From NCBI RefSeq assembly GCF_003704095.1, contig NW_020843537.1, positions 62,001 to 126,000 of the forward strand: a stretch of 64,000 bases of DNA, given 5' to 3'. The notes under the pieces are model-generated. The model was given only the letters and a program-made list of their open reading frames with translations, was not told the origin of the DNA and did not search any database. Below are positions 799 to 47,761 of the stretch, piece after piece. Positions within the stretch are counted from its first letter, which is position 1, and each line of letters starts with the position of its first letter. The position numbers were made by a program, and so were the translations under genes. This DNA is from Pocillopora damicornis (taxonomy: Eukaryota).

Positions 799-1709
799 AT
801 GAATAACAGTTTTGTGATTGAAGTTTTTGCCCGTGTTTTATTCAGCTTCACACGCGGTGTGACAGAGCACTACGACCCTGATGAGCCTGAAGTGGAGATC
901 TTTGGATACAACGATAGCTTAAGCAGTGAGGGTCGAGAGTGGAATTGTCAGCCCGTTGATAAACCTATTTATCAGGAATATTCACCGCCATCGGACGACG
1001 ATTATGATCTCTTGTCAGTCGGTAATTCTCGACTTAGATATCGGGTCATTGACGCGAGCTCACCGGACGAAGATGGAGACGAACAGCAAGATGTAGATAA
1101 CGAAATGGCATGGAAGCGATTCAGACCGTCCGTTCTTTGCACAATTTGTCAATCTATGTACATCGGCGCATTAATTTCACTTTTAACTCCAGCCATCTTA
1201 GGCCTTTTTTACGTCATGATCTGTTACGTCTCTTATGAAACAGTACTCAACTGCCAATTTGACCCGAATGAGAGAATCCCAGTTAAAATACAGTGGATCA
1301 GAACATTGTCTGGCGTGATAAGTATAGCCTTTCTATACATGTGGTTCTTTGTAGGAATGCTTTTTCTTTTTCGACCGTATCAGTTAAATGGCGTGAAAAG
1401 AAAACTCATTCTTGTTGCTTTTGTCTTTTTTTGTGTGGATACAGTGTATCGTGTTGTCTTTCAAGTCTTTGGAATATCTAATTCCCAGTTTTCTGTGATT
1501 CGGAAGATTCCTCTCAACATTATATTCCTAATTAGCGTATGTTGCCAAGTTTACCTTCTAGCAAATCACTTTCGGAACCTGTCGAGTAGGACGAGTTTAT
1601 TTATAAAATTAACGACACCCTACTGCTTCACTTTCTTTATTGGCATCTTTGCAGAATCGTTTATTTATCCAATGTACAACAAGCAAACTGAACATGGAAA
1701 ACTCCTTAT
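799..1709 (+). CDS. Uncharacterised multi-pass membrane protein family ('CKMPF family'), 5' half, truncated by assembly gap
   Basis: Open frame from ATG 799 (MNNSFVIEVF...) to the gap, with IYQEY, MAWKRFRPS and FRPYQLNGVKRKL motifs shared with complete copy 37535..39145; no introns. Confidence 0.8.
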
Positions 1710-1809
1710 NNNNNNNNNNNNNNNNNNNNNNNNNNNNNNNNNNNNNNNNNNNNNNNNNNNNNNNNNNNNNNNNNNNNNNNNNNNNNNNNNNNNNNNNNNN
1801 NNNNNNNNN

Positions 1810-3053
1810 ATTCAATAGCAAGCGGAACTGAGGTATAAGTTGCAAATTCCTGAAGCAGCGTCAACAATGAAATATTTTGTAAATAAATGAATTGGTATAC
1901 GTAAAACAATCCGTTAGCACACACAATGGCAGTTGATTCATACAAAATGCTTATGATAACGATATCAGCCATAAGTCTCTCTCGGCGAGGAGTGCGAAAA
2001 CTTCTTCAAGGAGCTGATATTCTTTTCAAGATTACATGAAAAATATGATCACTGAAGACCATGGCGCTTCGTTCTAGAACCTCTACCGCGCAGTAAATTA
2101 TTCCAAGAGCAGCGATGAACTTGATGTTTTCAAGTTCTGCCTGCATTACTCGAAACATGATCGCCGATGCAAAATACAACGGCACTAAGAAGATGTACGA
2201 GTATCCTGGATGAGCAATTTTCTTCAAGCGTTGAGTGCAAAGTCGTAAGATTACCTTAAAGATAACTCCAAAGAGAGGTGAAAAGAGTGCAATCAGGAGT
2301 TTTTCCATGTTCAGTTTGTTCGTTGTACATTGGATAAATAAAAGATACTGCAAAGATGCCAATAAAGAAAGTGAGGCAATAGGGTGTCGTCAATTTGATA
2401 AATTAAGTCGCTCTACTTGACAGTTTTCGGAAGTAATTTGTTAGAAGATAAACTTGCCAACATATGCTACTTAGAGATATAATGTTGAGAGGAATCTTCT
2501 GAAAAACAGAAAGTTGGGAATGAGATATTCCAAAGACTTGAAGGACAACACGATACACTGTATCCACGCAGGAAAGGACAAAAGCAACAAGAACGAGTTT
2601 TCTTTTCACGCCCTTTAACTGATACGGTCGAAAAAGAAAAAGCATTCCTACAAAAAAACCACATGTATCGTAAGGGACGTAAGAGATTATTACGCATAAA
2701 AGGCTAATGAAGGCTGGAGTTAAAAGTGAAATAAATGCGCCGATGTACATTGATTGACAAACTGTGCGAAGAACGGACGGTCTGAATCATTTCCAAGCCA
2801 TTTCGACATCTTCATTTTGCTGTTCGTCTTCATCTTCGTCCGGTGAGCTTGCGTTAATGACCCAAAATCTTACTCGAGAATTACCGACTGACAAGAGATC
2901 ATAATTGTCGTCCGATGGCGGTGACTATTCCTGATAAATAGGTTTATCAACAGGCTGACAATTCCACTCTCGACCCTCACTTAAGCTATCGTTGTAACCA
3001 AAGGTCTCCACTTCAGGCTTATCAGGGTCGTAATGCTCTGTCACTCCTTGTGT
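1810..3053 (-). pseudogene. CKMPF-family pseudogene
   Basis: Homologous to copy 799; ~100-nt deletion near 2665 removes the NCQF loop; frameshifts; PWG codons changed to CCT TGA AGA (stop at 2006-2008); 5' end replaced by a LINE fragment. Confidence 0.85.
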
Positions 3054-5792: not shown

Positions 5793-6777
5793 TTTCTGTC
5801 TGTTTTTTCCCGTGTTTTATTCAGCTTCACACGTGGCGCGACACAGCATTACGACCCAGCTGAGGCTAAAGTGGAAACCTTTGGATATAACGATAGCTTA
5901 AGCAGTGAGGGTCGAGAATGGAATAGTTNNNNNNNNNNTAAACCTATTTATCAGGAATATTCACCGCCATCGGACGACGATGATGATCTCTTGACAGTCG
6001 GTAATTCTCGAGNNNNNNNNNNGGTCACCAATACGATCTCACCATGCAGATGAAGATGAAGACGAACAGNNNNNNNNNNATGATGAAATGGCTTGGAAGC
6101 GATTCAGACCGTCCGTTCTTCGCACAGTTTGTCAATCAATGTACATCCGCATATTGATTTCACTTCTATCCGCTGTCATCCTCAGCCTTTTTTACATCAT
6201 GATCTCTTACATCTCGTCCGAACCGATGCGGAACTGGCAATTTCACCCGAAGGAGACACCCCCAGTCAAAATACAGTGGATCAGNNNNNNNNNNNNNNNN
6301 NNNNNNNNNNNNNNNNNNNNNNNNNNNNNNNNNNNNNNNNNNNNNNNNNNNNNNNNNNNNNNNNNNNNNNNNNNNNNNNNNNNNNNNNNNNNNNNNNNNN
6401 NNNNNNNNNNNNNNNNNNNNNNNNNNNNNNNNNNNNNNNNNNNNNNNNNNNNNNNNNNNNNNNNNNNNNNNNNNNNGTGTATCGTGTTGTCCTTCAAGTC
6501 TTCGGAATATCTCATTCCCAGCTTTCTGTGACTCAGTAGATTCCTCTCAACATTCTGTTTCTAATTAGCATATGTTGCCAAGTTTATCTTCTAACAAATC
6601 ACTTCCGGAACCTGTCAAGCAGAGCGAGTTCATTTATAAAATTGACAACACCGAGCTGTTTAAGCTTATTTATTGGCATCTTTGCAGTATCGTTTATTTA
6701 TCCAATGTACAACAAGCAAACTGAACATGGAAAACTCCTCACCGCNNNNNNNNNNCCTCTCTTTGGAGTTATCTTTA
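5793..6777 (+). pseudogene. CKMPF-family pseudogene, 5' half
   Basis: Homologous to copy 799; in-frame TAG at 6537-6539; loop Cys changed to Trp; homology ends at a SINE-like sequence. Confidence 0.8.
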
Positions 6778-6844
6778 CCTCTGCGATACCGGTTCATGGG
6801 TTCAAATCCCGTACGGGCCTGAAATTTTTTTCAGGTCCTACTTA
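6777..6844 (+). mobile_element. tRNA-derived SINE fragment
   Basis: Pol III B-box GGTTCAAATCC at 6799-6809 followed by a CCTGAAA-TTTTTTCAGG hairpin; abuts the coding sequence at GVIF; no full cloverleaf. Confidence 0.6.
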
Positions 6845-9136: not shown

Positions 9137-9551
9137 TCAAGAAAACGGCATTTTGCAAGGATGGTTAGTTTCACTAAACCACCCGTGTAAAATTTCTAGG
9201 ACACACCCGCTGGACCACAATGCTAAGGGAACTGCATTAACAATTGCTACAAGTACATGTCTTTTCCATCTTTTTCGCCAAACAGCCATGACGGCCATGT
9301 TCTGATAGTGAGTTTCTATCGCAAGAGATACGCTAGTGAAAAACCACTCAATCACCAGTAAAATCGATGTTTGGATGGCGAACGATATAAGCAAATTTGC
9401 AAAGGATTCGTTTTCCACGTAAATAAGTTGATACAAGAAGAAAACGCCATTAACAGACACGAGGCCGATTGACTCATACAACATACTTATAATGACAATA
9501 TCAGCCATTAGTCTCTCGCGGCGAGGAGTGCGAAAACTTCCCCAAGGAGCT
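9137..9551 (-). CDS. CKMPF family, 3' part (truncated by gap)
   Basis: Open frame APWGSFRTPRRERLMAD...NHPCKMPFS-TGA. Confidence 0.75.
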
Positions 9552-9651: not shown

Positions 9652-9763
9652 AGCAATTGTTAATGCAGTTCCCTTAGCATTGTGGTCCAGCGGGTATATC
9701 ATAGAAATTTTACACGGGCGGTTCAGTGAAACTAAGCATCCTTGCAAAATGCCGTTTTCTTGA
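9652..9763 (+). CDS. CKMPF family, 3' tail (truncated by gap)
   Basis: AIVNAVPLALWSSGYIIEILHGRFSETKHPCKMPFS-TGA followed by the shared spacer. Confidence 0.65.
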
Positions 9764-10982: not shown

Positions 10983-12198
10983 ATGTCATAGGCTCATTAT
11001 TTATGTCGGTCATTTATCTCCCGTATAAGACTTAACTCAACTGTCAGTTTCACTCCTACCAGTCAATTCCAGTTTAAGTTCAATGGATCAGTTCAATATC
11101 TGGTATCCTCTCCTATGCTTTTATATACATGTGGTTCTTCGTAACTGTGGTTTTGTTATTTCGCCCATTTCAGGTGATCGGGGTGAAGAGAAAGCTTGTC
11201 CTAGCAACTTTTCTATTGTATGGCTTGGACACACTTTATCGCGTTGTTCTACAAGCGTTACGAATAAATCAGTCAAAGTCTTTCACAAAGCAAAAGATAC
11301 CTTTCCATCTTATGTTTCTTATGACCATATCCGTGCAAGTTTATTTTTTAATGAAGCATTTTTTAAGTGGACGCTCGAGAAAACAACGGGCAAATTTTTC
11401 TTTCAAATGATTCTTCTGACCTGTTTTAGCGACATTCTGGCTTTCGTCCCAGCTTTTTCTTTATACCCAGCTTACATCGAACTAAACAAGGAAGGTAAAC
11501 TTCTGATCGCTGTTTCCGCTCCGCTTGTTGGAGTTGTTCTGAAAGTAATTTCAAGGATTTCCGTTCAGCGGTTGTGGAAATTTATACATCCGGGATATTC
11601 GTATGTGTTATTGGTGCCGGTGTATTTTGGCTCAGCTGTTTTGTTTCGAGTATTGCAAGCCGACTAAGGCAGTTTACAATCCATGGCTACTCTTGGAATA
11701 ATTCACAGTGTTGCATAAAGTTTTAGAAAGAAGCATGATGGTTATCATTAATCACTTCTGCCACGTGCTTTGGAAAAGAAAATGAGCTCCTTGGGGAAGT
11801 TTTCGCACTCCTCACCGCGAGAGACTAATGGCTGATACTTCTATTGTAAGTAAGTTGTATGAGTCAATCGGCCTCGTGTCTGCCAATGGCGTTTTCTTCT
11901 TCTATCAACTTATTTACGTGGAAAACGAACCCTTTGCAAACTTGCTTAAATTGTTGATCATCCAAACATCAATTTTACTGCTGATTGAGGGGTTTTTCAC
12001 CAACGTATCTCTTGTGATAGAAACTCACTATCAGAACATGGCCGTCATGGCCGTTTGGCAGAAAAGATGGAAAGACATGTACTTGTAGCAACTGTTAATG
12101 CAGTTCCCTTAGCATTGTGGTCTAGCAGGTCTAACATAGAAATTTTACACGGGCGGTTTAGTGAAATTAACCATCCTTGCAAAATGCCGTTTTCTTGA
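10983..12198 (+). pseudogene. CKMPF-family pseudogene
   Basis: Colinear homology through to HPCKMPFS-TGA, with several stops (e.g. TAA 11665-11667) and frameshifts (~11400, ~12070). Confidence 0.9.
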
Positions 12199-14229: not shown

Positions 14230-14766
14230 AAGAAATGCAACACCTATCACGTCAGACAGTGTTCTGATCCACTGTATTTTGACCAGGATTGTCTCCGCCG
14301 GGTGAAATTGGCAGTTGTGTGTCGTTTCGTAGGAGACGTAAGCCATCGTGACGTAAAAAAGGCTAATGATGGCAGGTGTTAAAAGTGAAATTAATGCGCC
14401 GATGTACATTGATAGACAAACTGTACAAAGAACGGATGGTCTGAATCGCTTCCAAGCCATGTCGTCATCTTCATTTTGCCGATCGTCTCCATCTTCATCT
14501 GGTGAGCTCGCGCCGATGACCAGATTTCTAACTCGAGGATTACCAACTGACAAGAGATCATAATAGTCGTCCGATGGTGGTGAATATTCCTGACAAATGG
14601 GTTTATCAACGGGATAACAATTCCACTTTCGACCCTCACCGCTCAAGCTATCGTTATATCCAAAGGTCTCCGCTTCAGGCTCATCAGGGTCGTAATGCTC
14701 TGTCACGCCGTGGGTGAAGCTGAATAAAATACGAGCAAAAACTTCAATCAGCAGACTGTTATTCAT
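14230..14766 (-). CDS. CKMPF family, 5' part (truncated by gap)
   Basis: Open frame MNNSLLIEVFARILFSFT...IQWIRTLSDVIGVAFL; upstream 14767-15081 is homologous to 465-798. Confidence 0.8.
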
Positions 14767-19789: not shown

Positions 19790-20090
19790 TCAAGAAAACG
19801 GCATTTTGCAAGGATGGTTAGTTTCACTGAACCGCCCGTGTAAAATTTCTATGATACACCCGCTGGACCACAATGCTAAGGAAACTACATTAAGAATTGC
19901 TGCAAGTATACGTCTTTTTCATCTTTTCCGCCAAACAGCCCCGACAGCCATGTTCTGTTAGTTTCTATCGCAAGGGATACGCTGGTGAAAAACCACTCAA
20001 TCACCAATAAAATGGATGTTTGGATGGCAAATGATTTAAGCAAATTTGCAAAGGATTCGTTTTCGTAAATAAGTTGATACACGAAGAAGA
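19790..20090 (-). pseudogene. CKMPF-family pseudogene, 3' part
   Basis: 4-nt deletion in ETHYQ; RWK changed to AGA TGA AAA (19919-19921); ends HPCKMPFS-TGA. Confidence 0.85.
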
Positions 20091-21493: not shown

Positions 21494-21677
21494 TCAAGAA
21501 AACGGCATTTTGCAAGGATTGTTTAGTTTCACTGAACCGCCCGTGTTAAGTTTCTATGATACACACGCTGGACCACAATGATAAGGGAACTGCATTAATA
21601 ATTGCTACAAGTATACGTATTTTTCATCTTTTCCACCAAACGGCCATGACAGCCATGTTCTGATAGTGAGTTTCTAT
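21494..21677 (-). pseudogene. CKMPF-family pseudogene, 3' part
   Basis: IETHYQNMAVMAVW...PCKMPFS with TGA at 21624-21626. Confidence 0.85.
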
Positions 21678-22404: not shown

Positions 22405-23152
22405 ATCAAATCTTAACTGAGAGATTTATAGACGCGTGCGCACCGGAGGAAAATGAGAAAAAGCTAAGCGGCTTATCAGATGAAGATCGAGCAATGGCTT
22501 GGAAGCAGCTCAGATCATCCACTCTTTCCGCAAAGTGGAGAGCAATGTGTACTGGTGCTTTGATTCCACTGCTGACTGCTACTGTTATCGGCGTACTATA
22601 TATAATAACCTACGTCTGCTATCAGACTATATACAACTGCCAATTTCATGACACGGAGACAATTCCTGAGAAAGCACAATGGATCAGAACATTGTCTGAT
22701 GTCACAGGTTGTGTTTTCCTGCACTTGTGGTTCTATGGAGGCGTGCTCTTACTTTTTCGACCATATCAGGTAATGGGGTTAAACGGGAAACTGTTCCTTG
22801 TAGCTTTTCTTCTGTTTTCTTTGGATGCAACTTATCGTGTGGCTCTTCAACTCCTTGGGATATCGCGTTCTAAACTTTCTGTGTTACTAAAGTTTCCGTT
22901 GAACGGTTTGTTCCTCCCCAGTATATGTTGGAAAAATTATCTCTCGACAAATGCATTTCGTACTCTAACAAAAAGGCGGTATTTGGTTCTAAAAATTATA
23001 TCGCCGAGCCGTTTCTCTTTCATAATAGGCATCTTCGTACCATCTTACATTTACCTGAAGTACGGCAAGCAAGATGCGAAAGGAAAGCTACTTATGGCAA
23101 TCTTCTCGCCTCTCATCGGGGTTGTTCTTGAGGTGATCTCTCGACTATGCGT
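22405..23152 (+). pseudogene. CKMPF family, 5'-truncated copy (3' end in gap)
   Basis: IDACAPEENE..DEDRAMAWKQLR...LIGVVLEVISRLC; the N-terminal ~80 codons are absent from contiguous sequence. Confidence 0.7.
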
Positions 23153-24477
23153 NNNNNNNNNNNNNNNNNNNNNNNNNNNNNNNNNNNNNNNNNNNNNNNN
23201 NNNNNNNNNNNNNNNNNNNNNNNNNNNNNNNNNNNNNNNNNNNNNNNNNNNNAGGAGATGAACAGAAAGACTTAGCAGAAAGCAGTTGGATAATAAATAA
23301 CTTATTGAACGTGTGTAGTATCGCTGAGTAATTTTACTCGTTGTTTGTATTTTGACTCACCCTACGGGCTCGACTTAAATCTCATGAGGTTCTTAAAATT
23401 AATATACTGAACTTCACACTTGAATATAATTTCTTATGCACTCATACTAGAATGCAACGTAGTGAACCAAACCCCTGCTTCAGAGTTTTGGGATCGAAAA
23501 GAATTTTATAATACGATTCGCTGTCATTAATAGTGACCTTCAATATTACGGAAAATAGACTTGAACCAATCTTTTCTTAAGTTTTAGACTATTGGCCAGA
23601 CTTAGTTAGATGTAGTGTTGGTAAACTTTTGCCCTTTAAGTAAAACTGTTAGTGTATAACTGAAAAGTCCTGCACTTCATCCTGAGGGGTGGGGTGAGGG
23701 TTAAGAAACGAGGATGCACTATTGACTTTAATGTCTCATCTTCCAATTTACTTAATGACTGAGTGGAAGAGCCAGACAGGAGAATATTTGACTCGAGATC
23801 ATGACCGAGAGCCAAACATTTTCCTGTCCATCATATTATGCGAAAACTTAAGTAATTGTTTTATTATACATTTTTTTGGAAACAATCTGCCAAGAAAGAC
23901 ACTTCTCTCTGAGTTTACAAAAGTTTGAGAACACTTCACGGACGAGGGGCATAGAAACTAGGAAGACTTTGAACTCAACATAGTAACCCAATATCTGCTG
24001 CAGATACTGGGTTATCCCGTCAACTTCACACGCCTATGTATACTAACTAAATTCTCTCAACCAATCAGAGTTTTCATAGTTACTCTAATGTATAACAATA
24101 TTCCTTATTACTTTATTAATGTCAGAATAGCCATAGTTGTTGTGTATTGACAGATAATTATATTGACGATGTAAACGTTTGAACGTCCACAAATCAACAA
24201 TTAGTTTGCAAAAACTCGTTCTGTAACTATATAATTTTACACTCAACAAAATTAAAGCAATTAAGAACTGAATTTTACATATGATCCACCGCATGTGGTA
24301 AACAAATATCATGTTTAACTCATTTTTCCGCAAGGTTTGTTCTTGTCATTATGTAGTTTCATTAAATTGACCGAAATGAACCATATTGTATTTGTTTGCC
24401 AAGGATTAGACATGCAATTCTGTAGATATTGTTGTAAGAGCAGTTTTTTTTGCTGATACTTTTTTTTTTTTTTTTTA

Positions 24478-29064: not shown

Positions 29065-30644
29065 ACGAGGAGTGCGAAAACTTCCCGAAGAAGCCGATCA
29101 TCTTTTCAAAATCACGTGCCAGAAATATATTTTAGCTTAATCGGGTGAACAAAACCTGATCATTTACCATAATAATATTTTATGTTGACGGAGATTGNNN
29201 NNNNNNNNNNNNNNNNNNNNNNNNNNNNNNNNNNNNNNNNNNNNNNNNNNNNNNNNNNNNNNNNNNNNNNNNNNNNNNNNNNNNNNNNNNNNNNNNNNNN
29301 NNNNNNNNNNNNNNNNNNNNNNNNNNNNNNNNNNNNNNNNNNNNNNNNNNNNNNNNNNNNNNNNNNNNNNNNNNNNNNNNNNNNNNNNNNNNNNNNNNNN
29401 NNNNNNNNNNNNNNNNNNNNNNNNNNNNNNNNNNNNNNNNNNNNNNNNNNNNNNNNNNNNNNNNNNNNNNNNNNNNNNNNNNNNNNNNNNNNNNNNNNNN
29501 NNNNNNNNNNNNNNNNNNNNNNNNNNNNNNNNNNNNNNNNNNNNNNNNNNNNNNNNNNNNNNNNNNNNNNNNNNNNNNNNNNNNNNNNNNNNNNNNNNNN
29601 NNNNNNNNNNNNNNNNNNNNNNNNNNNNNNNNNNNNNNNNNNNNNNNNNNNNNNNNNNNNNNNNNNNNNNNNNNNNNNNNNNNNNNNNNNNNNNNNNNNN
29701 NNNNNNNNNNNNNNNNNNNNNNNNNNNNNNNNNNNNNNNNNNTGACGGCCATGTTCTGATAATGGATGGCAAAAGATTGAAGGAATTTTACAAAGGGTTG
29801 ACTTGGCAGGTAAACAACTTGATATGGGCACAATACGGTGTAAACAGGCATGACACCAACTGATTAATACGACATGCTCACGATGGCGATTTTAGCTAAT
29901 TAGTCTCTCACGACGAGGAGTNNNNNNNNNNNNNNNNNNNNNNNNNNNNNNNNNNNNNNNNNNNNNNNNNNNNNNNNNNNNNNNNNNNNNNNNNNNNNNN
30001 NNNNNNNNNNNNNNNNNNNNNNNNNNNNNNNNNNNNNNNNNNNNNNNNNNNNNNNNNNNNNNNNNNNNNNNNNNNNNNNNNNNNNNNNNNNNNNNNNNNN
30101 NNNNNNNNNNNNNNNNNNNNNNNNNNNNNNNNNNNNNNNNNNNNNNNNNNNNNNNNNNNNNNNNNNNNNNNNNNNNNNNNNNNNNNNNNNNNNNNNNNNC
30201 ATCACCGCTGAGCCGAAATATACCGGTGCCATAAAGACGTATGAATGTCCCGGTATACTGGGTAAATGGAATAAACCGCGATGAAACCAAGAATATAGCA
30301 CAAATAGCTTGNNNNNNNNNNNNNNNNNNNNNNNNNNNNNNNNNNNNNNNNNNNNNNNNNNNNNNNNNNNNNNNNNNNNNNNNNNNNNNNNNNNNNNNNN
30401 NNNNNNNNNNNNNNNNNNNNNNNNNNNNNNNNNNNNNNNNNNNNNNNNNNNNNNNNNNNNNNNNNNNGTTTGAAAATTTATTTTACCTGTCATGCTTAAA
30501 ATAAGGGAGAACACTGTAAAAACGAAACAAAGGGACGGCCGCAAGTGCTGGTGACCCAAATGCATTTAAGGCTTGTAAACCAACACGACAAAGAGCATCC
30601 AAGCAATGCGCAAAGAAAGTGGCCAGAAAGAGCTTTCTGTCTAN
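29065..30644 (-). pseudogene. Heavily degraded CKMPF-family fragments among gaps
   Basis: Islands: HVILKR..SFRTPR (29065-29125), TPRRERLI...HYQNMAV (29742-29921), PGHSYVFMAPVYFGSAVM (30200-30260). Confidence 0.7.
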
Positions 30645-34338: not shown

Positions 34339-35490
34339 ATGAGTACAAGCACACTATTAGAGGTATTTGGTCACATGGTGGTCAGTTTTACGAAAGGCGT
34401 GATAGCGTTTTACAACCCAGATGAACCAGAGTTCACGTCAGAGTCCTTGGGCTACAATCCATTAGAAAGTACAGGTCGAGAGTGGGACTATCATCCCTTG
34501 GATGAGTTCATTTATCAAGAATACAGCGATAGAGGGCACACACCTGGCTCCTCTTATATACCGTCAAGAAATATTGCTGTAAGAGTTATAGACGCTTGCT
34601 CACCCGAAGAAAAGGAAGAAACACGAGGTGAACAGCGAGGAGATGACAGAGCAATGGCTTGGAAGAGTTTCAGACCTTCCACTTGTCACACAATTTGGAA
34701 ATCACTGTATACTGGAACTTTGATTTCATTACTAACTGCAGCAATCATCGGCTCTCTATTCTCGTCGTTCACTTATCTCTCTTACGAAACTGTACTCGAT
34801 TGTCCGTTCCACTCCATTGAGTCAATTCCGTCACAGATACAATGGATGAAATGTATATCCGGGATCTTATCTTCTGCCTTTGTATACATGTGGTTCCCTG
34901 TGAGTATGTTACTTCTATTTCGTCCTTACCAGTTAATCGGAGTGAAAATGAAACTGGCGCTTGCTGCTTTCTCAGTGTATTGCTTGGATACCCTTTATCG
35001 TGTTGGACTACAGGCCTTTGAAGTTTTACAGTCCAAGGCATTCACATCACCGAAACTTCCGCTCAACTTTCTGTTTCTTCTTAGTGTATGTTTGCAAGTT
35101 TATCTTGTAACGAGCCACTTCTCGGTCAGCCTTTCGAGGAGGCAACGAGTTTATTTATTCTTACAACTGATTCTTCCAAGCTGTTTCAGTTACATTGTTA
35201 CTTTCATTACAATTTACACAATTTACCCGGCATACAATAAACAAAAAAATGAAGGTAAATTACTGATTGCCATCCTCGCTCCTCTGGTTGGATTTGTACT
35301 CAAAGTAATTTGTAGGATTTCTGTTCAGCGGCTAAGGAACGTTACACATCCGGGATATTCATACGTATTACTGGCGCCGCTGTACTTCGGATCAGCGATT
35401 GTGTTTCGAGTTTTACAAGCAGATCTAGACAGTTTGCGATCTATGGCTATTCTTGGAATAGTTCATGGAATTGCGGAGGTCTTAGAACGA
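34339..35490 (+). CDS. CKMPF family, 5' ~70% (3' end lost in gap or insertion)
   Basis: Open frame MSTSTLLEVFGH...HGIAEVLER. Confidence 0.85.
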
Positions 35491-37534: not shown

Positions 37535-39145
37535 ATGAGCAGTACATTGATAGAGGTGTTTGGCCATATCGTTTTCAGTTTTACACGAAACGTGACAGAG
37601 CATTATAACCCAACAGAACCTGATTTTACGGCAGAATCTTTTGGCTACGATCCTCTACAGAGCACAGGTCTGGAATGGAATTACCTTCCGGTTGATGAAC
37701 TTATTTATCAAGAACACGAGGACGATGAAGTCACAAGCCCGGATTATTTCGCGGCAAGCAGTCTTAACGTGAGAGTTCTAAACGCCTGTTTACCTGATGA
37801 AAAGCAAGAAATACAAGACGAACAGCAAAATAAAGATAGAGCCATGGCTTGGAAGAGACTCAGACCATCCGCCATCTGCACAGTTTGTAGGTCAATGTAC
37901 ATTGGGGCTTTGATTTCACCGCTGTCTGCTACCATCATAGGTTCACTTTATATGCTTATCTCCTACATCTCCTACCAAACTGAACTCAACTGCCAATTTC
38001 ACTCACACGATTCCATTCCACTGAAAATACAATGGATTCGAACATTGTCTCAAGTGATAGCGTGCGTTTTCCTTTACATGTGGTTCTTTATAGCTACGCT
38101 TTTCCTTTTCCGACCATACCAGTTAAAAGGGGTTAAGAGAAAATTAATCTTCGTTGTCTTTCTGATGTTTTGTTTGGATACACTTTATCGTGTACTCCTC
38201 CAAGCCTATGGAATATCTCATTCGAAGATATCAACATTAAAAAGGCTGCCACTTAACTTTCTATTTTTGATCAGTATATGTTGGCAAGTTTATATTCTAA
38301 CTAATCATTTCCGCATACTGTCCAGAGGGCGGCGCCCAAACTTATTTTTTAAAATACTGTTGCCAAGCTTAGTTACTTTCCTTCTTGGCATCCTCATAAC
38401 TTCGTTTATTTACCCCGTGTACAACAAGCAAAACGGGAGAGGAAAATTAGTAATTGCCCTCTTTTCGCCCCTCAGTGGGGTTATCTTCAAAGCGATCTCC
38501 CGAATTTGCGTTCAGCGGTTATGGAACATAACTCATCCGGGATATTCATATGTCCTATTGGTGTCTTGGTATTTTGGCTCGGCGATTATTTTCCGAGTTT
38601 TGCAAGCAGATTTAGACAGTTTGCAGTCCATTGCCATTCTTGGGATAGTCCACGGCTTTGCAGAAGTCATAGAACGCAGCACCATGGTTTTTATTGATCA
38701 CATTTTTCATGCTATTTGGAAAAAAAAATCAGTTCCTTGGGGAAACTTCCGCACTCCTCGCCGTGAGAGACTGATGGCTGATGTCGCCATCATAAGCATG
38801 TTATATGAATCAGCTGGTATAGTGTCTGTTAACGGTGGTTTGTACTTGTATCAACTCATTTACTTACGAAGCAGTTCACTTTTAAAGCTACTGCAGGAGT
38901 TTGCTTTTCGCACCTCAGTTCAGCTGGTCATTGAATGGTTTTTCACTAGCGTATCTCTCGCGATCGAGACTCACTATCAGAACATGGCTGTCATGGCTGT
39001 TTGGCGAAAAAGATGGAAAAGACACTTTTTGGTAGGGGTAGTAAATGCCGTGCCTTTAGCTTTGTGGACAAGCAATTATCTCATAGAGATTGTAAATGGG
39101 CGACTTAATGAGGCTGATCAGCCATGTAAAATGCCGTTTACCTGA
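37535..39145 (+). CDS. CKMPF family, complete intronless gene, 536 aa multi-pass membrane protein
   Basis: Intact ORF; ATG chosen by homology with other copies (MSSTLIEVFGH); ~10-11 hydrophobic segments. Confidence 0.92.
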   Translation: MSSTLIEVFGHIVFSFTRNVTEHYNPTEPDFTAESFGYDPLQSTGLEWNYLPVDELIYQEHEDDEVTSPDYFAASSLNVRVLNACLPDEKQEIQDEQQNKDRAMAWKRLRPSAICTVCRSMYIGALISPLSATIIGSLYMLISYISYQTELNCQFHSHDSIPLKIQWIRTLSQVIACVFLYMWFFIATLFLFRPYQLKGVKRKLIFVVFLMFCLDTLYRVLLQAYGISHSKISTLKRLPLNFLFLISICWQVYILTNHFRILSRGRRPNLFFKILLPSLVTFLLGILITSFIYPVYNKQNGRGKLVIALFSPLSGVIFKAISRICVQRLWNITHPGYSYVLLVSWYFGSAIIFRVLQADLDSLQSIAILGIVHGFAEVIERSTMVFIDHIFHAIWKKKSVPWGNFRTPRRERLMADVAIISMLYESAGIVSVNGGLYLYQLIYLRSSSLLKLLQEFAFRTSVQLVIEWFFTSVSLAIETHYQNMAVMAVWRKRWKRHFLVGVVNAVPLALWTSNYLIEIVNGRLNEADQPCKMPFT

Positions 39146-39399: not shown

Positions 39400-39683
39400 G
39401 AAAGTTTCCAACTGAGTGTCGAAAAACCAAAATCAAAGTAATCACAGTGACTAAACGTAACAAAGGTTTACAATATCATCAGCCAATGAGACCTCACAGT
39501 GAGAACAAGCCAACTGCTAGAACTGAGCGCGGGAAACGCGAATGACCAAGTCGCGACTGCTTTTAGTTTGCATCTGATTGGTAGAGAGAATGGCGCGAGG
39601 TTTTGTAGACAATCATAGAGCAAAGTAAGGATAAAGCAATAGCACCTTAGATTAATTTCGACACTTGATTGAAAATTGTTCTA
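39400..39683. mobile_element. MITE-like repeat
   Basis: Homologous to 32270-32552; imperfect TIR (..actgagtgtcgaaa / tttcgacacttgatt..). Confidence 0.65.
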
Positions 39684-41479
39684 AATGCAACCAATAAAAC
39701 GCAGCTTTCTGGCTAGTTATTACGTGATCACTTACATTCTGCCGCACTAAACGCCTCTTATCATTTTGTTTTAACACTGAATTCTCATTGCGAGCTTTTT
39801 AATATTCAGACTTTCGCTAAGATTGTAGCTATTTTCATTTGTTGAGATTTAACAGCATTTCATCAAAATATTCATCAAAAATTGATTTCAGAATAAACTG
39901 ATAGAAATTAGAATCACAAATTGATTTCAGAATAAACTGTGTAGTTGATAAAAGTTAGAAACGAGTGAATGATTTTTATTTATCATAACAGAGAATCAGA
40001 AGAAATAAATAAACTTGGGTTTGACATGATATAACTGACCTCTGGAACTGCAGAAAAGGCAAAAATTGTCCAACAAAAAATTATGAAAATGAAATGCTGG
40101 GTTAAAAGAAAATCAAAGAGGAATTAAATATGAGAAAACGCATAGCGAAATTGCTTGTTATGGTACCAATTTTCGGATGCATATCAGTTCCGATTCTGTT
40201 TATGTCATCTCCAATTCTTCTGGATACGTGGGATCCAAACCTGTAGGTAAAATATCTCATTGAAAGTAGGACACATGTGGGGAGTTAGCTACTTCACCTA
40301 TCACAAAAAGATGAACTCATGGTTCTGTACTAACTGGAGCGAAGGATACACAATCGATGAGCTCATCTCAGTGAGGGTCATTTTTCGCAAGAAATATGGA
40401 ATCCAGTCGCTCGTCAACGACTTCTATCTATTTACAATATCACAATCTCATCGTCAATTCACATTCCGCCAGAGATAATGCGGTTAATTTACAGCCTAAG
40501 CTTGGAGAACCGTGAACGCTGTTCAGGTGGTAACTATGCGTAACAAAACAGAAAAAATAAATGTGTATGGATCTAACAAAACACATTTCAATTCATTTTG
40601 AAAACTGGCAAGGGAAAATTGAAACAACTACATACGTGTACAATCAAATTTATCGAAAAATTCTGAGCAAGGCAAGTTTTCAACGAAAATTCCTCAAGAA
40701 CTAGTACCTGAATTCTATCTGAATATCAATTGAGACCCACAGAAAAGCGCCGAAATCCTTCTTGAGAGTTCAACTTAATTTACTCAGATGAGGATCGAAA
40801 GTGTTCTACTTATAAAATACTCATACGTTTAGACTGAAAGACTGAAAGGAACGGCTGAGAGACGGCTGAGTGACGCACTTCCTAATGACGTGATACGCAA
40901 TTTGCAGGACCAGATTTAGAGAGCTGTACACGTTGGAGCTGAAGTGATACTATATAAGGATAAGATATCAGATTTACAGGGAAAGCCTGAAGGATGTACA
41001 AGAAGAATGAAAGATAATAAACATATGAATGAAAGACTGACACGGAATGATGATTTCTTCCCCGAGGTCAATAGCAGTAAACTGATCGAGGAGTTCAATT
41101 AAATGAAGTACACCCAAGGATCTTATTTCATTCGCATTTATGGTTTCGATCCTCTACACGGCAAAGCTCGATCCACCTTATGTTGAGAAACCTCAAGATA
41201 AAAAAGCTACAGCCACTTCATTTCATATCGATTTGTGCGACTCAAAGCGTGACTGAGCCGTGAAGATTTAGAACTGGTCTTCCTTCACTGAATTTGTTCG
41301 GGCACTACAAAAGATTACAGAGCCGCTAGGCAAGAAAATCAGAAACAATATCTCATTTTCGAAATTAGCAACAGTTGAGGCAACACATTTGGCGGCTCAA
41401 GGCATACATTACTCCAAACGGCTGTGAAAGAGGAAACGAATATCTCTTAGAAATTCGTCCGTGTAACTTCACCAAGAAA

Positions 41480-43060
41480 ATGCGTATCATAGAAATACTA
41501 AGTCACATCATGTACAGTTTTACACGAAGTGTGGCAGACCATTACAGCCCAGAAGATTCAGAATTTACGGCAGAATCTTCTGACTACGTTCCTCTACAAA
41601 GCACAGGTCTAGAATGGAACCATCAACCGGTTGATGAGCTTATTTATCAAGAATACAGCCACTCTGATAACGGTTTTACTATAAGGGTGCTGGACGCTTG
41701 TTCACCAGAGAAGAACGAAGAAATTCCAGAAGATCAGCAAGATGAAGACAGAGCGATGGCTTGGAAGCGACTTAGACCATCTTCACTTCGCACAGTTCGT
41801 AAATCAATGTACTTCGGTGCACTGATTTCAATACTGACGGCTATGGTCATAGGCTCGTTGTATTGTTTGATCAGTTACGTATCTTTTCAAACCATGTTTA
41901 ACTGCCAATTTCACCAAAAGAAGTCCATCCCCGTGAAAATTCAATGGATGAGAACATTATCTGATGCTGCAAGCTGTGGTTTTATTTACATGTGGTTCCT
42001 TGTGAATATCTTTTTTCTTTTTTTACCGCATCAGCTTCAAGGGCTGAGGAGGAAACTTATTTTCGGTACTTTTATGCTATATTGTTTGGACGCACTTTAT
42101 CGTGTAATCCTTCAGAGCTCGGGAATATCCCATTCTAGGCTAACCAAAATACAAATGATTCCACTCATCGTTTTATTTCTTGTTAGCTTATGTTGGCAAG
42201 GTTATCAATTATGGAATCGCTTCCAAGTATTGTCACGAGGACGTATCTTTTTTTTTGTGCAAATTGCAGCACCGGGCTTCTTTACTTTTCTCATTGGTAT
42301 CGTCACGGTGTATTTCACTTACCCAATGTACAACGAAGAAAATGAAAACAGAAAACTTCTTATTGCAATCTTTGCTCCCCTCTCTGGACTCCTTCTCAAA
42401 GTCATCGTGCGAATTTGCATTCAATCCTCATGGAACATCACACATCCGGGATATACCTACATCTTGTTCGTGCCTCTTTATTTCGGCTCAGCGATTTTGT
42501 TTCGAGTAATGCAGGCAGAACTTGAAAACATCAGCGCAATCACTATTCTGGGAATAATCCACGGGGCTGCAGAAGTTCTAGAACGAAGCACCATGGTTGT
42601 CATCGATCACATATGTCATGTTGTTTTGAAAAGAAGAGCAGTATCTTGGGGAAGTTTTCGTACTCCTCGCCGTGAGAGACTAATGGCTGATATCGCTATC
42701 ATTAGTATGCTGTATGAATCAACTGCTATAGTGTCTGTTAACGGTGTTCTGTACTTGCACAAATTTATTTACTTAAAGGAAAACTCTCTTTCAACGTTAT
42801 TCCAGAGGTTTTTGGTGGCGAGCTCAGTCCAGCTAGTGATTGAGTGGTTTTTCAACAGCATCTCTCTGGCAATTGAGACTTATCATCAGAACATAGCTGT
42901 CATGGCTGTTTGGCAACGAAAATGGAAAAGACACGTTTTGGTGGCGGTGATCAACGTGATCCCTTTAGCATTATGTTCTACACTACCAATTATTCAATTT
43001 ATGCACGGGCAGCTTGCTAAGTCCCGAACTGACCAGCCATGCAAAATGCCATTTTCTTAG
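41480..43060 (+). CDS. CKMPF family, complete intronless gene, 526 aa
   Basis: Intact ORF MRIIEILSHIMYSFTR...DQPCKMPFS-TAG. Confidence 0.92.
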   Translation: MRIIEILSHIMYSFTRSVADHYSPEDSEFTAESSDYVPLQSTGLEWNHQPVDELIYQEYSHSDNGFTIRVLDACSPEKNEEIPEDQQDEDRAMAWKRLRPSSLRTVRKSMYFGALISILTAMVIGSLYCLISYVSFQTMFNCQFHQKKSIPVKIQWMRTLSDAASCGFIYMWFLVNIFFLFLPHQLQGLRRKLIFGTFMLYCLDALYRVILQSSGISHSRLTKIQMIPLIVLFLVSLCWQGYQLWNRFQVLSRGRIFFFVQIAAPGFFTFLIGIVTVYFTYPMYNEENENRKLLIAIFAPLSGLLLKVIVRICIQSSWNITHPGYTYILFVPLYFGSAILFRVMQAELENISAITILGIIHGAAEVLERSTMVVIDHICHVVLKRRAVSWGSFRTPRRERLMADIAIISMLYESTAIVSVNGVLYLHKFIYLKENSLSTLFQRFLVASSVQLVIEWFFNSISLAIETYHQNIAVMAVWQRKWKRHVLVAVINVIPLALCSTLPIIQFMHGQLAKSRTDQPCKMPFS

Positions 43061-45351: not shown

Positions 45352-46261
45352 ACTGCCAAACACTCCACCTCTACCTTTATTGGATTATAATGATGAAGTA
45401 ACCGAGAAACTAGGAGAGAGCGAAAGTTTTTTCTTTATACTATCGTGTGCTTAACATGGATTTTTCCCAAGGTGTGCACAGTGTAAAAATTTTCTCTCCC
45501 AGGTATCTAGAGGACAGAATGAGCCGAGGCAAGAAACACATGACCACACCATACCATGACAATCGTATAACTTGAAACAGTAAGCGCGCAGTTACACGAC
45601 ATATCCAGACTTTGCTTTTTTTGACTATATGTTACAATTTCTTTGGGTTTTTTTTTTTCTCTATTTTTGTTTGGAATTTATTTTTGTAAGCATCTTTACC
45701 TTCCTACACCATCCTCGTCACCTTTTGATTAATTTACACCTCATACTATTTACTTTAATTCTCGAGCAAAATGTTATCGTAAAGTTCTCTTTCTTTAAAG
45801 GCAATTCCCTTGGACTCAAAACAACGTAATATTTTCTTACAAGACAGCATTTTTGCCGTATACTTAGAGGTGAATGGTCGAAATTTTTCAGGGACGGTCT
45901 TTTGTTCAAGGTAGACTATAGTCTCAGTTCTGCTCTCACTGAAATTTTGAAATTCGCATTAGTTTTATCTATGTATAATTTTTCAGTTTAAACCCTTCAA
46001 ACGGTTTTCGTTTGGCTTTGGCTGTTTGTACTCTCTCGGATCTTTTAGCTATTTAAGTAATCAGTTGAGTTTTCCTGTATTTGAGGATGGAACTAAACGA
46101 ATTCTCTAAAGAAATGTTATTTAACTCCAGTGGTTCATTCATTGACGTAAAGTGAGTCACTNNNNNNNNNNNNNNNNNNNNNNNNNNNNNNNNNNNNNNN
46201 NNNNNNNNNNNNNNNNNNNNNNNNNNNNNNNNNNNNNNNNNNNNNNNNNNNNNNNNNNNNN

Positions 46262-47761
46262 TACCTTCCTCTACAAAGAACAGGTCTAGAGTGGGACTAT
46301 CAACCTGTTGATGAGTTTATTTATCAGGAATATAGCGACAGGGAAGTCAGAACCTCTGACCCTCTCACAGTCAGCCGCCATCAAGTATTGGTTATAAATG
46401 CATGTTCACCAGACGAAATCGAAGAAAAACAAGAAAGTGGACAAGATGAGGACAGCGCAATGTCTTGGAAGCAACTCAGACCATCTGCTCTTTGCACAGT
46501 TTTGAAATCAATGTACACTGGAGCTTCGATTTCTCTGCTAACAGCGGCCATCATCGGCTTGCTTTACATGTCAATCTCCTATCTTTGTTACAAAACCGCC
46601 CACAACTGTGAATTTTATCCCCACAAAATTCCAGTCTCAGTGCAGTGGGTGAGAACATTATCTACACTAATTTCATTTGCTTTTCTTTACATGTGGAACT
46701 TTGCGAGGATGTTCTTTCTCTTTCGGCCATATCAGTTACTAGGAGTGAAAGGAAAACTTGTTCTGGTTTCCATTCTTGTTTACTTTTTAGACGCACTCTA
46801 TCGCGTGGCTCTACAAGCTTTAGGAATATCTAATTCCAGACTCTCCGTATTCCTAACGATTCCACTGAACACTTTGTTTCTTATCAGCATATGCTTGCAA
46901 GTTTACTTCTTAACAAAGCACTTCTGCTTCCGATCAAGGAGACTTAGAGTGAGTCTGTTTTTACAGATGATAATGCCTGGCTGTTTCTGTTTCGTATTCG
47001 CTATTGTCATAGCTGCTTTCATTTACCCACTGTTCAACGAATAAAACGAAGACGAAAAACTATTGATAGCTGTCTTCACACCTCTCACTGGGGTCGCACT
47101 GAAGGTCATTTCGCGAATTCATGTACAACGATCATGGAACATTACACATCCAGGATATTACTATGTATTGCTGTCGCCGCTGTACCTTGGCACAGCCGTC
47201 ATGCTTCGAGTTTTGCAAGCTGATCTTAAGAGCTTACAATCCATGGCCATCCTTGGAATAATTCACGGTGCAGCAGAAGTCATAGAACGAAGTACCATGG
47301 TTGTCATCGATCACGTTTGTCATGTTATTTTGAAAAGAAAATTAGCTCCTTGGGGAAGTTTTCGCACGCCTCGCCAAGAGAGATTGATGGCTGATCTTAG
47401 CATCACGAGCATGTTGTATGAATCAACTGCTATAGTGTCTGTTAACGGATTTTTGTACTTGTACAAATTTGTCTATTTAGAAAATGTGTCTGTTTTAGAA
47501 TTGCTGCAGTCTTTTACCGTTCGGACTTTAGTTCAGCTGGTGATTGAGTGGTTTTTCACCAGCGTATCTCTTGCGATTGTGACTCATTATCAGAACATGG
47601 CTGTCATGGCTGTTTGGCGAAAAAGATGGAAAAGACACACCCTGGTGGCTATAGTAAATGCAGTTCCTTTGGCTATGTGGACCAGCACAAATCTTTTAAT
47701 CACTGTGCACGGACGTTTTCAAGAGTCCTCATATCAACCGTGCAAAATGCCGTTTATTTAG
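46262..47761 (+). pseudogene. CKMPF family, near full length with a single in-frame TAA (47042-47044); start in gap
   Basis: NE*NEDEKLLIA versus NEQNKEG/NEENENRK in paralogs; same frame on both sides. Confidence 0.85.

What the first reader, a model, noticed from the sequence alone, without database searches (positions are those of the whole stretch)
799..47761. Large tandem expansion of an unnamed intronless ~11-TM membrane protein family
Seen: about 22 copies or fragments in 47 kb, all intronless although neighbouring HAUS2 has five introns. The C-terminal half is near-invariant (HGxAEVxERS, PWGSFRTPRRERLMAD, SMLYES, EWFFTSVSLAIETHYQNMAVMAVWRKRWKRH, CKMPF) while TM1-TM5 and loops vary. Known: it lacks class A GPCR motifs (DRY, NPxxY), the gustatory-receptor-like TYxxxxxQF motif and MFS motif A. 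Inference: clustering, birth-and-death turnover, single-exon structure and a variable half on a fixed core are typical of chemosensory, immune or allorecognition receptor families. This may therefore be an undescribed receptor, channel or transporter system.
Basis: partly seen in the sequence, partly recalled or inferred. Interest (0 to 1): 0.9.

Follow-up and report, generated by a model that had tools for sequence, protein, structure and literature searches.

The report
Unnamed cnidarian 11-helix membrane protein array
A stony-coral genome segment carries a real tandem cluster of at least 12 single-exon genes for a cnidarian membrane protein with 11 helices that matches no named family or solved structure, so its job (probably moving or sensing small molecules) is still unknown.

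Summary
tblastn finds 19 copies or fragments (not about 22) between 805 and 47761. Because 12 pieces overlap on the same residues, they represent at least 12 distinct genes. Two are intact single-exon ORFs, two are nearly intact, eight are open but cut off at assembly gaps, and seven are degenerate. An independent TARA coral scaffold confirms the two intact neighbours at 98.7% identity.

All named relatives are cnidarian: stony corals, a sea anemone and two hydrozoans. There is no hit in Pfam, NCBIfam or PDB sequences. A confident AlphaFold core (pLDDT 90.6, pTM 0.90) has no Foldseek match in PDB or BFVD (TM-score at most 0.24).

The predicted topology is N-terminus inside, 11 helices, C-terminus outside, with no ectodomain. 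Copies are under purifying selection (dN/dS about 0.2) and most are old (dS above 1). The C-terminal half is more conserved than TM1-TM5 but is not invariant. TM2 and TM5 vary on all faces. No transposon, prokaryotic or viral link was found.

Best reading, inferred: a small-solute or ion translocator, or a ligand-tuned pore, diversified by birth-and-death duplication. An immune or allorecognition role is disfavoured. Copy number in the first 35 kb is uncertain because of gaps.

The parts
805..1707 (+). Copy 1, residues 2-306, open reading frame, cut off by gap 1710-1809
   Evidence: tblastn 56% identity, no stops; frame open up to the gap
1811..3053 (-). Copy 2, residues 17-467, pseudogene (4 stops, 1 frameshift); its C-terminal end abuts gap 1710-1809
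   Evidence: 89% nt identity to copy 1 over the shared part
5793..6782 (+). Copy 3, residues 5-320 in three pieces separated by five N gaps; its integrity cannot be judged
   Evidence: gap lengths are only estimates and nothing was filled
9140..9547 (-). Copy 4, residues 401-536, open, cut off by gap 9552-9651
   Evidence: 72% identity, no stops
9653..9760 (+). Copy 5, residues 501-536, starts at gap 9552-9651; inverted relative to copy 4
10985..12195 (+). Copy 6, residues 134-536, pseudogene (6 stops, 3 frameshifts)
14230..14760 (-). Copy 7, residues 2-180, open, cut off by gap 13812-14229; young relative of copy 1 (dS 0.31)
19793..20088 (-). Copy 8, residues 436-536, degenerate (stop and frameshift), abuts gap 20091-20190
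21519..21677 (-). Copy 9, residues 477-529, degenerate (2 stops), abuts gap 21678-21777
22413..23153 (+). Copy 10, residues 77-326, open, cut off by gap 23153-23252
   Evidence: 98.5% identical to database protein P0146
26182..27219 (-). Copy 11, residues 114-461, open, gaps at both ends
   Evidence: 93% identical to P0069
27321..28169 (+). Copy 12, residues 253-536, open, starts at gap 27220-27319; inverted young relative of copy 11 (95% nt identity, dS 0.09)
   Evidence: 97% identical to P0073
28908..29127 (-). Copy 13, residues 389-467, degenerate remnant
29744..29899 (-). Copy 14, residues 414-486, degenerate remnant (37% identity, 1 stop)
34345..35490 (+). Copy 15, residues 2-381, open, cut off by gap 35491-35590; its last ~155 residues do not follow the gap
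37535..39145 (+). Copy 16, intact single-exon gene, 536 aa; used as the reference copy
   Evidence: 99% identical to P0001 on TARA scaffold L001, which is colinear with window 35814-42156
41477..43060 (+). Copy 17, intact single-exon gene, 527 aa
   Evidence: also present as the second gene on L001
43748..45351 (+). Copy 18, full length but with one frameshift at an A-run near 44098-44101
   Evidence: could be a sequencing error or a real lesion
46262..47761 (+). Copy 19, residues 38-535, N-terminus lost in gap 46162-46261, one in-frame stop at 47042-47044
49617..50264 (-). Neighbouring spliced gene HAUS2 (two exon pieces located); not part of the family
   Evidence: Pfam PF15003, E 1e-13 and 2e-3
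51862..53289 (+). Neighbouring single-ORF F-box protein; its end runs through gap 53165-53264; not part of the family
   Evidence: Pfam F-box-like, E 6e-11; gap list

Best explanation
WHAT IT IS (shown). This is a genuine tandem array of 12 to 19 single-exon genes in a stony coral, probably a pocilloporid (that part is inferred). The genes encode a membrane protein family of about 530 residues whose named members are all cnidarian.

PREDICTED ARCHITECTURE (predicted, not measured).
- A disordered acidic N-terminal tail of about 110 residues lies in the cytosol and carries a conserved acidic-aromatic motif.
- Eleven transmembrane helices follow.
- A short C-terminal tail lies outside the cell.
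- There is no ectodomain.
- Two conserved cysteines (C153 and C531) both lie outside and may form a disulfide bond.

MECHANISM (inferred). The protein moves a small polar solute or ion across a membrane, either as a carrier or as a ligand-tuned pore.
- TM6-TM10 and the cytosolic motifs (HPG, FRTPRxxRLxAD, WxKKW) form the common translocation or gating core.
- A ladder of conserved polar residues spans the bilayer: R412 and D416 at the inner boundary, E425 near the middle, D215 and Y218 in the outer half, and R354 and Q357 at the outer mouth.
- The hypervariable helices TM2 and TM5 set the selectivity of each paralogue.

ORIGIN OF THE ARRAY (inferred). It grew by unequal crossing-over with birth-and-death turnover. 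Most paralogues are old and kept by purifying selection, a few are young, and several are dead.
For: ARRAY AND STATE OF THE COPIES. Independent confirmation of copies 16 and 17 comes from TARA scaffold L001 (98.7% identity over 6343 nt).

WHO HAS IT: 1218 clusters at 90% identity and 590 representatives at 50% identity. Named members are Oculina, Acropora, Desmophyllum, Montipora, Actinia, Hydractinia and Clytia. Tandem pairs also occur in the distant loci L002 and L004.

STRUCTURE: 11 long helices with high confidence (pLDDT 90.6, pTM 0.90). All the positively charged loops fall on one side of the membrane.

CONSERVED RESIDUES: conserved charged or polar residues sit in the helices, and the two cysteines are conserved in at least 46 of 49 sequences.

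SELECTION: median dN/dS is 0.195 overall, 0.21 for TM1-6 and 0.15 for the C-terminal half.

VARIABILITY: entropy is highest in TM2, TM4, the L4-5 loop and TM5, and lowest in the L6-7 loop, the L8-9 loop and TM9. In TM4, 6, 7, 8 and 10 the variable face is the hydrophobic face, as expected for lipid contact. TM2 and TM5 vary on all faces, with sites that switch between polar and apolar.

AGE: each window copy is as close or closer to an Oculina protein than to most of its neighbours, and the copies are scattered across the tree.
Against: - No homology or fold match ties the family to any transporter or channel. The best Foldseek hits (Rh proteins, MdfA, LacY) have E of 0.02 or worse and TM-scores of 0.24 or less.
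- No internal repeat of the kind common in carriers was found.
Their depth in the membrane was estimated only from helix boundaries.
- Tens of paralogues per genome and about one third dead copies are more typical of sensory receptor families than of carriers.
- Nothing shows that the window's own copies are expressed.
- The topology rests on the positive-inside rule alone.
Confidence: 0.42

Rival explanations
1. A non-conducting chemosensory or signalling receptor. Small ligands bind in a pocket formed by the variable helices TM2, TM4 and TM5. The conserved cytosolic face (HPG loop, FRTPRxxRLxAD, WxKKW and the N-tail motif) couples to one shared intracellular partner.
For: - Its genomic behaviour matches chemoreceptor families: intronless tandem arrays, old paralogues, young duplicates and 7 of 19 pieces degenerate.
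- The most conserved segments are cytosolic loops.
- A linear motif in the disordered tail is conserved from corals to Clytia.
- TM2 and TM5 vary on all faces.
Against: - It has no GPCR or insect-receptor motifs or fold.
- Conserved buried charges (D215, R354, E425) are easier to explain by translocation.
- One of the most variable segments, the L4-5 loop, is predicted to be cytosolic.
- No expression data place the copies in sensory cells.
Confidence: 0.25
2. A membrane-embedded enzyme, for example one that modifies lipids or foreign compounds. Its active site would sit at the cytosolic membrane interface and be built from H334, E380, D388, R412, D416 and N483. The family would be diversified for substrate range in the way detoxification enzyme families are.
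For: - A cluster of nearly invariant His, Asp, Glu, Arg and Asn residues lies in or next to cytosolic loops.
- Enzyme families for detoxification and glycosylation are also tandemly amplified in corals (PMC10236652).
Against: - There is no sequence or fold match to MBOAT, GT-C, acyltransferase-3, PAP2 or any other membrane enzyme in PDB or Pfam.
- Two of the five fully invariant residues (R354 and Q357) lie near the outer end of TM7, far from that cytosolic cluster.
Confidence: 0.12
3. An immune or allorecognition receptor family that recognises macromolecules from microbes, symbionts or neighbouring colonies.
For: - Tandem expansion in corals parallels the amplified innate-immune families described in PMC10236652.
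- Expansion is much larger in stony corals than in the hydrozoans seen so far.
Against: - Predicted extracellular loops are only 3-14 residues long and there is no ectodomain.
- dN/dS is 0.15-0.34 in every region, with no sign of diversifying selection.
- Paralogues are old and shared across coral lineages.
Confidence: 0.05
4. The apparent size of the array is partly an assembly artefact. Short contigs from a repeated or heterozygous region may have been scaffolded in arbitrary order and orientation. Alternatively, the copies could be transposon cargo drifting neutrally.
For: - There are 41 N gaps, and 14 of the 19 pieces abut a gap at one end or both.
- Three inverted pairs straddle 100-N gaps, one of them at 95% identity.
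- Copy 15 lacks its last third although the gap after it is written as only 100 N.
- A 0.5-1.5 kb 3' flank recurs, twice without a gene body.
Against: - Twelve pieces overlap on the same residues and differ by 5-45%, so they cannot be one gene or simple alleles.
- The 34-48 kb part is contiguous, and part of it is confirmed by an independent assembly.
- Intergenic ORFs carry no transposase, reverse-transcriptase or integrase domain, and the old copies share no termini.
- dN/dS of about 0.2 excludes neutral drift for the open copies.
- Tandem pairs recur in the unrelated loci L002 and L004.
Confidence: 0.08

Closest known systems
Intronless tandem chemoreceptor GPCR arrays (vertebrate olfactory, TAAR, V1R and T2R genes; coral-amplified rhodopsin-like GPCR orthogroups, PMC10236652)
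   Same: Single coding exon, tandem clusters, tens of paralogues, a mix of old conserved paralogues, young duplicates and pseudogenes, purifying selection on each copy, and conserved cytosolic motifs next to variable helices.
   Different: It has 11 helices rather than 7 and the N-terminus is predicted inside. DRY and NPxxY are absent, there is no 7tm Pfam hit, and there is no Foldseek match to any GPCR.
Insect odorant and gustatory receptors (seven-transmembrane ion channels) and cnidarian gustatory-receptor-like proteins
   Same: Predicted N-in, C-out topology. The N-terminal helices vary and the C-terminal helices are conserved. Outside loops are minimal. The family is large and tandemly expanded. 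A ligand-gated pore is one plausible way it works.
   Different: It has 11 helices rather than 7 and lacks the TYxxxxxQF motif. No OR or GR structure appears among the Foldseek hits. Its oligomeric state is unknown.
Secondary transporters (MFS such as LacY and MdfA; Rh/Amt), which are the top but non-significant Foldseek hits
   Same: A polytopic all-helical protein of 400-450 membrane residues, with conserved charged residues inside helices and short loops.
   Different: E-values are 0.02-0.1, TM-scores 0.12-0.24 and rmsd 17-24 angstroms. There is no 6+6 or other internal repeat, no motif A and no Pfam hit.
Anonymous 'conserved dark orthogroups' of stony corals (PMC13044578) and coral-amplified tandemly duplicated orthogroups (PMC10236652)
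   Same: These are coral genes with no ascribable function, many of them membrane-associated and often tandemly amplified. This family may be counted among them.
   Different: Those papers treat such groups in bulk. In the text I searched, I found no description of this family, its topology, its fold or its spread across Cnidaria. I could not link an orthogroup number to it.

Membership tests
Class A (rhodopsin-like) GPCR | Seven transmembrane helices with an outside N-terminus | tested here: not met
   11 long helices in two AlphaFold models; the positive-inside rule places the N-terminus in the cytosol
Class A (rhodopsin-like) GPCR | DRY and NPxxY motifs; match to Pfam 7tm_1 | tested here: not met
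   Both motifs are absent; there is no Pfam hit in 23 members
Insect-type 7TM ion channel / gustatory-receptor-like | Seven helices, a C-terminal TYxxxxxQF-type motif, and the fold of the OR/GR structures | tested here: not met
   The motif is absent; there are 11 helices; no OR or GR chain is among the top 50 Foldseek PDB hits
Major facilitator superfamily | Twelve helices as a 6+6 internal repeat, with motif A between TM2 and TM3 | tested here: not met
   hhalign of the N-terminal half against the C-terminal half gives probability 0.1; motif A is absent; the LacY and MdfA Foldseek hits have TM-scores of 0.19 or less; there is no Pfam hit
Rh/Amt ammonium channels | The 11-helix Amt fold and a match to the Pfam ammonium transporter family | tested here: not met
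   The best Foldseek hit, 7uzq_L, has E 0.042, TM-score 0.15 and rmsd 23 angstroms; there is no Pfam hit
Birth-and-death multigene family (genomic behaviour, not a protein family) | Tandem clustering, with paralogues of very different ages and pseudogenes side by side | tested here: met
   dS ranges from 0.09 to above 2, and seven copies are degenerate; the window's copies are scattered among the paralogues of other corals in the tree
Transposon cargo | Transposase, reverse-transcriptase or integrase genes, or shared terminal repeats, flanking the copies; neutral evolution | tested here: not met
   No such Pfam domain occurs in intergenic ORFs of 75 aa or more; similarity among the old copies stops at the coding sequence; dN/dS is about 0.2
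Horizontally acquired prokaryotic or viral gene | Relatives in bacterial, archaeal or viral sequence | tested here: inconclusive
   Pattern scans of genome contigs and viral contigs found no relative, and BFVD and NCBIfam gave none. The pattern scans only reach fairly close relatives.
Cnidaria-restricted family | Members in several cnidarian classes and none outside the phylum | tested here: inconclusive
   Members are present in Scleractinia, Actiniaria and Hydrozoa.

The most novel reading that the evidence does not exclude
This could be a new structural class of animal chemoreceptor or ligand-gated channel. It would be an 11-helix, N-in, C-out protein found only in Cnidaria. Stony corals would have multiplied it into large tandem arrays to sense or exchange small molecules from seawater, microbes or their algal symbionts.
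Probability: 0.25. Interest if true: 0.9.

Novelty: new variant of a known kind. Interest (0 to 1): 0.62.

Why it matters
Corals are known to amplify membrane receptor genes in tandem, but the amplified families discussed so far carry recognisable domains (PMC10236652). Many stress-responsive coral genes are 'dark', meaning they have no ascribable function (PMC13044578).

This family has four features that make it worth pursuing:
- It is large: 1218 clusters at 90% identity.
- It is old enough to be shared by anthozoans and hydrozoans.
- It is under purifying selection.
- Its predicted fold is very confident yet matches nothing solved.

That makes it a concrete, experimentally tractable candidate for a new transporter, channel or receptor class in an ecologically critical group. 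If it senses or moves small molecules, it bears on how corals perceive their chemical surroundings, their microbes and their symbionts. If it is a new fold, it is a worthwhile structural target.

The practical lesson for this window is that fragment counts in a gap-rich assembly overstate gene turnover.

Tried and rejected
SEARCHES THAT FOUND NOTHING.
- Curated libraries: Pfam on single copies and on all 23 members of A1, NCBIfam, and PDB sequences by phmmer and by two profiles.
- Foldseek with the full-length model against PDB gave only noise. I re-predicted the core alone from a deeper alignment to rule out an effect of the disordered tail. There was still no match in PDB or BFVD.
- Internal repeat: hhalign of the N-terminal half against the C-terminal half, and a self-comparison of the core, found none.
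- Literature: Noel et al. 2023, main text and supplements; accession and locus names of the named orthologues; keyword searches; and the 2026 dark-gene paper. No description of this family turned up, and I could not map it to an orthogroup number without sequence identifiers.
- HAUS2: the ten longest open segments of 55.2-64 kb gave no Pfam family above its threshold. The gene was then found at 49.6-50.3 kb.

TECHNICAL FAILURES.
- The search for homologous proteins with the distant-member profile A2 was swamped by hydrophobic words and returned only 8 proteins.
The smaller alignment A4 worked and found no prokaryotic or viral relatives.
- One search was a mis-specified query of mine that was too short, and it returned nothing.
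- In one search mafft dropped the stop character in copy 46262-47755, which put its codons out of register. Its dN and dS values in that table should be ignored. Later runs used X at the stop.

INCONCLUSIVE.
- The Logan contig L003 has no poly(A) tail, so it says nothing about transcription.

REJECTED READINGS. Transposon cargo, simple allelic duplication and an immune ectodomain receptor were each considered and set aside. The reasons are given under the rival explanations.

Full report
1. WHAT IS IN THE SEQUENCE

The window holds 41 runs of N. It is AT-rich, at about 36-40% G+C where it can be read.

tblastn with the intact ORF 37535-39142 (536 aa) finds 19 copies or fragments of one protein family between 805 and 47755, on both strands.

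Two copies are complete, uninterrupted ORFs: 37535-39145 and 41477-43060. Copy 43748-45351 is full length but has one frameshift at an A-run near 44100. Copy 46262-47761 has lost its first 37 residues in a gap and carries one in-frame stop at 47042-47044.

Eight further pieces are open as far as they can be read but end at an assembly gap. Seven are truly degenerate, with multiple stops or frameshifts.

Twelve pieces overlap on residues 134-461 of the reference, so the 19 pieces stand for at least 12 different genes.

2. THE GAP TEST THE SCAN'S PROGRAM ASKED FOR

Gap 1710-1809 does not interrupt one gene. Its left side is a + strand copy that is open up to residue ~306. Its right side is a - strand copy read from residue ~467.

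The gaps between 3321 and 4479 touch no family coding sequence. The short islands between them give no tblastn hit even at E<=10. The ORFs listed across them are N read as X.

Copy 34345-35490 stops at residue 381 at a gap written as 100 N, and its last third does not follow. That gap therefore hides at least 465 nt or a wrong join.

Three inverted pairs of copies straddle 100-N gaps. The order, orientation and number of copies in the first 35 kb are therefore uncertain. I filled no gap and looked up no missing letters.

3. IS THE ARRAY REAL?

Yes, at least from 34 to 48 kb. That stretch has only two gaps.

TARA Pacific coral metagenome scaffold L001 is colinear with window 35814-42156 at 98.7% identity over 6343 nt. 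It carries the same two neighbouring genes.

The overlapping pieces elsewhere differ by 5-45% in nucleotides, which is too much for simple alleles.

Distant subfamily loci from other assemblies (L002, L004) also carry two adjacent copies, each as one continuous ORF. Tandem duplication and a single coding exon are therefore habits of the family as a whole.

Next door, HAUS2 is a spliced gene on the - strand. Its exon pieces match PF15003 at 50064-50264 and 49617-49808. I searched them exon by exon and made no joined model. An F-box gene follows at 51862-53289.

4. WHO HAS THE FAMILY

The word-indexed search returned 1218 clusters at E<=1e-3. The exhaustive HMMER search returned 590 representatives at 50% identity.

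Every relative that carries a name is cnidarian and is called uncharacterized or hypothetical:
- Oculina patagonica, with at least 19 proteins among the top 120, nearly all on one 33.5-Mb record;
- Acropora muricata, Desmophyllum pertusum and Montipora species;
- the sea anemone Actinia tenebrosa;
- the hydrozoans Hydractinia symbiolongicarpus and Clytia hemisphaerica.

The hydrozoan proteins align over nearly the full length (BLASTP 29% identity with E 4e-51; hhalign probability 100 with E 1e-54).

The window's proteins are closer to Oculina than to Acropora, and the window matches a TARA Pacific coral sample. I therefore infer, but have not shown, that it comes from a robust-clade coral, probably a pocilloporid.

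Pattern scans of bacterial, archaeal and viral collections found no relative. Their reach is limited. Absence outside Cnidaria is not demonstrated.

5. WHAT THE PROTEIN LOOKS LIKE

No library recognises it. This covers Pfam on 23 members, NCBIfam, and PDB sequences by phmmer and two profiles.

AlphaFold2 on a 23-sequence alignment gave pTM 0.78, with a disordered first 110 residues. The membrane core alone, on a 49-sequence alignment, gave mean pLDDT 90.6 and pTM 0.90, with 11 long helices.

Foldseek found nothing significant:
- PDB: best E 0.02-0.04, TM-scores 0.24 or less, rmsd 17-24 angstroms. The top names are MFS and Rh proteins.
- BFVD: best E 0.067.

There is no internal sequence repeat.

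All the lysine- and arginine-rich loops fall on one side. This gives N-terminus inside, 11 helices and C-terminus outside. The outside loops are only 3-14 residues long, so there is no ectodomain.

The two conserved cysteines, C153 in loop 1-2 and C531 in the C-terminal tail, both lie outside. A disulfide bond between them is an inference.

Across 49 sequences from corals to hydrozoans, F192, R354, Q357, R412 and D416 are invariant. Nearly invariant are W106, C153, D215, Y218, P312, K319, R323, H334-P335-G336, E380, D388, P408, R409, E425, N483, W490 and C531.

By helix position these residues form a ladder of polar residues from the inner boundary to the outer mouth. This is inferred, because I had no coordinates.

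The disordered tail keeps an acidic-aromatic motif from corals to Clytia.

6. HOW IT EVOLVES

Nei-Gojobori estimates between window copies give a median dN/dS of 0.195. By region the values are 0.34 for the N-terminal tail, 0.21 for TM1-6 and 0.15 for the C-terminal half.

dS is above 1 for most pairs. A few young pairs have dS of 0.09-0.3 and dN/dS of 0.37-0.58. The values for copy 46262 in that table are unreliable because of a register error.

Over 116 coral paralogues, the N-terminal helices have 1.19 bits of entropy and the C-terminal half 0.72 bits. TM2, TM4, loop 4-5 and TM5 are the most variable. Loop 6-7, loop 8-9 and TM9 are the least variable.

In TM4, 6, 7, 8 and 10 the variable face coincides with the hydrophobic face, as expected for contact with lipid. 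TM2 and TM5 vary all round, with sites that switch between polar and apolar.

Each window copy is as close or closer to an Oculina protein than to most of its neighbours. In a tree the window copies are scattered rather than forming one clade. Most duplications are therefore old and the paralogues have been kept.

Transposon features are absent. Similarity among the old copies stops at the coding sequence. No intergenic ORF of 75 aa or more has a transposase, reverse-transcriptase or integrase domain.

A 0.5-1.5 kb 3' flank is shared by the younger, mostly degenerate C-terminal fragments in the first 25 kb. It occurs twice without a gene body. I read this as segmental duplication, but that is not proven.

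7. MOST LIKELY MECHANISM AND ITS RIVALS

Shown: this is a real, selected, cnidarian multigene family of 11-helix proteins with no ectodomain.

Inferred (confidence about 0.4): it translocates a small polar solute or ion, as a carrier or a ligand-tuned pore. TM6-TM10 and the cytosolic motifs would be the common core. TM2 and TM5 would be the specificity elements.

Rivals:
- A non-conducting small-ligand receptor that signals through the conserved cytosolic face (0.25). The chemoreceptor-like genomic behaviour favours it.
- A membrane enzyme with a cytosolic-interface active site (0.12).
- An immune or allorecognition receptor (0.05). This is disfavoured by the missing ectodomain and the low dN/dS.
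- An assembly or transposon artefact (0.08). This applies only to the copy count in the first 35 kb.

8. COMPARISON WITH WHAT IS KNOWN

In the genome the family behaves like intronless chemoreceptor GPCR arrays.

In topology and in its pattern of conservation it resembles insect odorant and gustatory receptor channels: N-terminus inside, C-terminus outside, a variable N-terminal part and a conserved C-terminal part.

It fails every membership test for GPCRs, insect-type channels, MFS and Rh/Amt.

Coral papers describe amplified tandem orthogroups (PMC10236652) and anonymous membrane 'dark' orthogroups (PMC13044578). I found no description of this family in particular.

9. VERDICT

The family is an undescribed protein family of a familiar genomic kind. 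I rate it a new variant of a known kind, with interest 0.62.

The boldest reading that remains open is a new structural class of cnidarian chemoreceptor or ligand-gated channel (probability about 0.25).

Noticed in passing
window 1710-1809, 9552-9651, 27220-27319: Three pairs of family copies lie in inverted orientation on either side of a 100-N gap, and the pair at 26182-28169 is 95% identical. They could be real inverted duplications that broke the assembly, or contigs joined in the wrong orientation.
   Followed up: partly
window 4671-4948, 8631-9140, 9760-10882, 12195-12709, 16673-18009, 18337-19793, 20196-21519, 23378-24279: A 0.5-1.5 kb stretch just downstream of the gene recurs at 76-90% identity beside six mostly degenerate C-terminal fragments. 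It also occurs twice without a gene body. No transposon domain was found in it.
   Followed up: partly
window 35491-35590 and 35814: Copy 34345-35490 ends at residue 381 at a gap written as 100 N, and its last ~155 residues do not follow. The independent TARA scaffold also ends at window position 35814. Both assemblies therefore break in this stretch, within about 330 nt of each other.
   Followed up: partly
window 37535-37860 (residues 1-110 of copy 16) and the same region of relatives: The N-terminal tail is predicted to be disordered, yet it keeps an acidic-aromatic motif (roughly L-[DE]-D-F, then D-x-[IV]-[YF]-x-E-[FY]-[DE]-x-P) from corals to Clytia. W-K-x-x-R-P follows just before TM1. 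It looks like a docking, sorting or phosphorylation site, but which one is unknown.
   Followed up: partly
window 38525-38533 (residues 331-333 of copy 16): A conserved N-I-T sequon sits next to the invariant HPG in a loop that the positive-inside rule places in the cytosol, where it could not be glycosylated. It is either not a glycosylation site or a warning about the predicted topology.
   Followed up: no
window 51862-53289: A single-ORF F-box protein gene (Pfam F-box-like, E 6e-11) lies beyond HAUS2. Its 3' end runs through gap 53165-53264, so its true end cannot be read.
   Followed up: partly
window 16063-16497 (- strand): The longest non-family open segment in the array is 145 residues long and has no Pfam match. 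Its nature is unknown.
   Followed up: partly
L004 15941-19944: In the distant locus L004 the tandem pair of family genes sits beside an HLH gene and a BTB-BACK-Kelch gene, both called as long single ORFs. The organism of this ENA assembly is not named.
   Followed up: no
cluster of P0326: One distant cluster contains members of 847 and 856 residues beside the usual 539. This hints at fused or extended forms of the family, which I did not examine.
   Followed up: no
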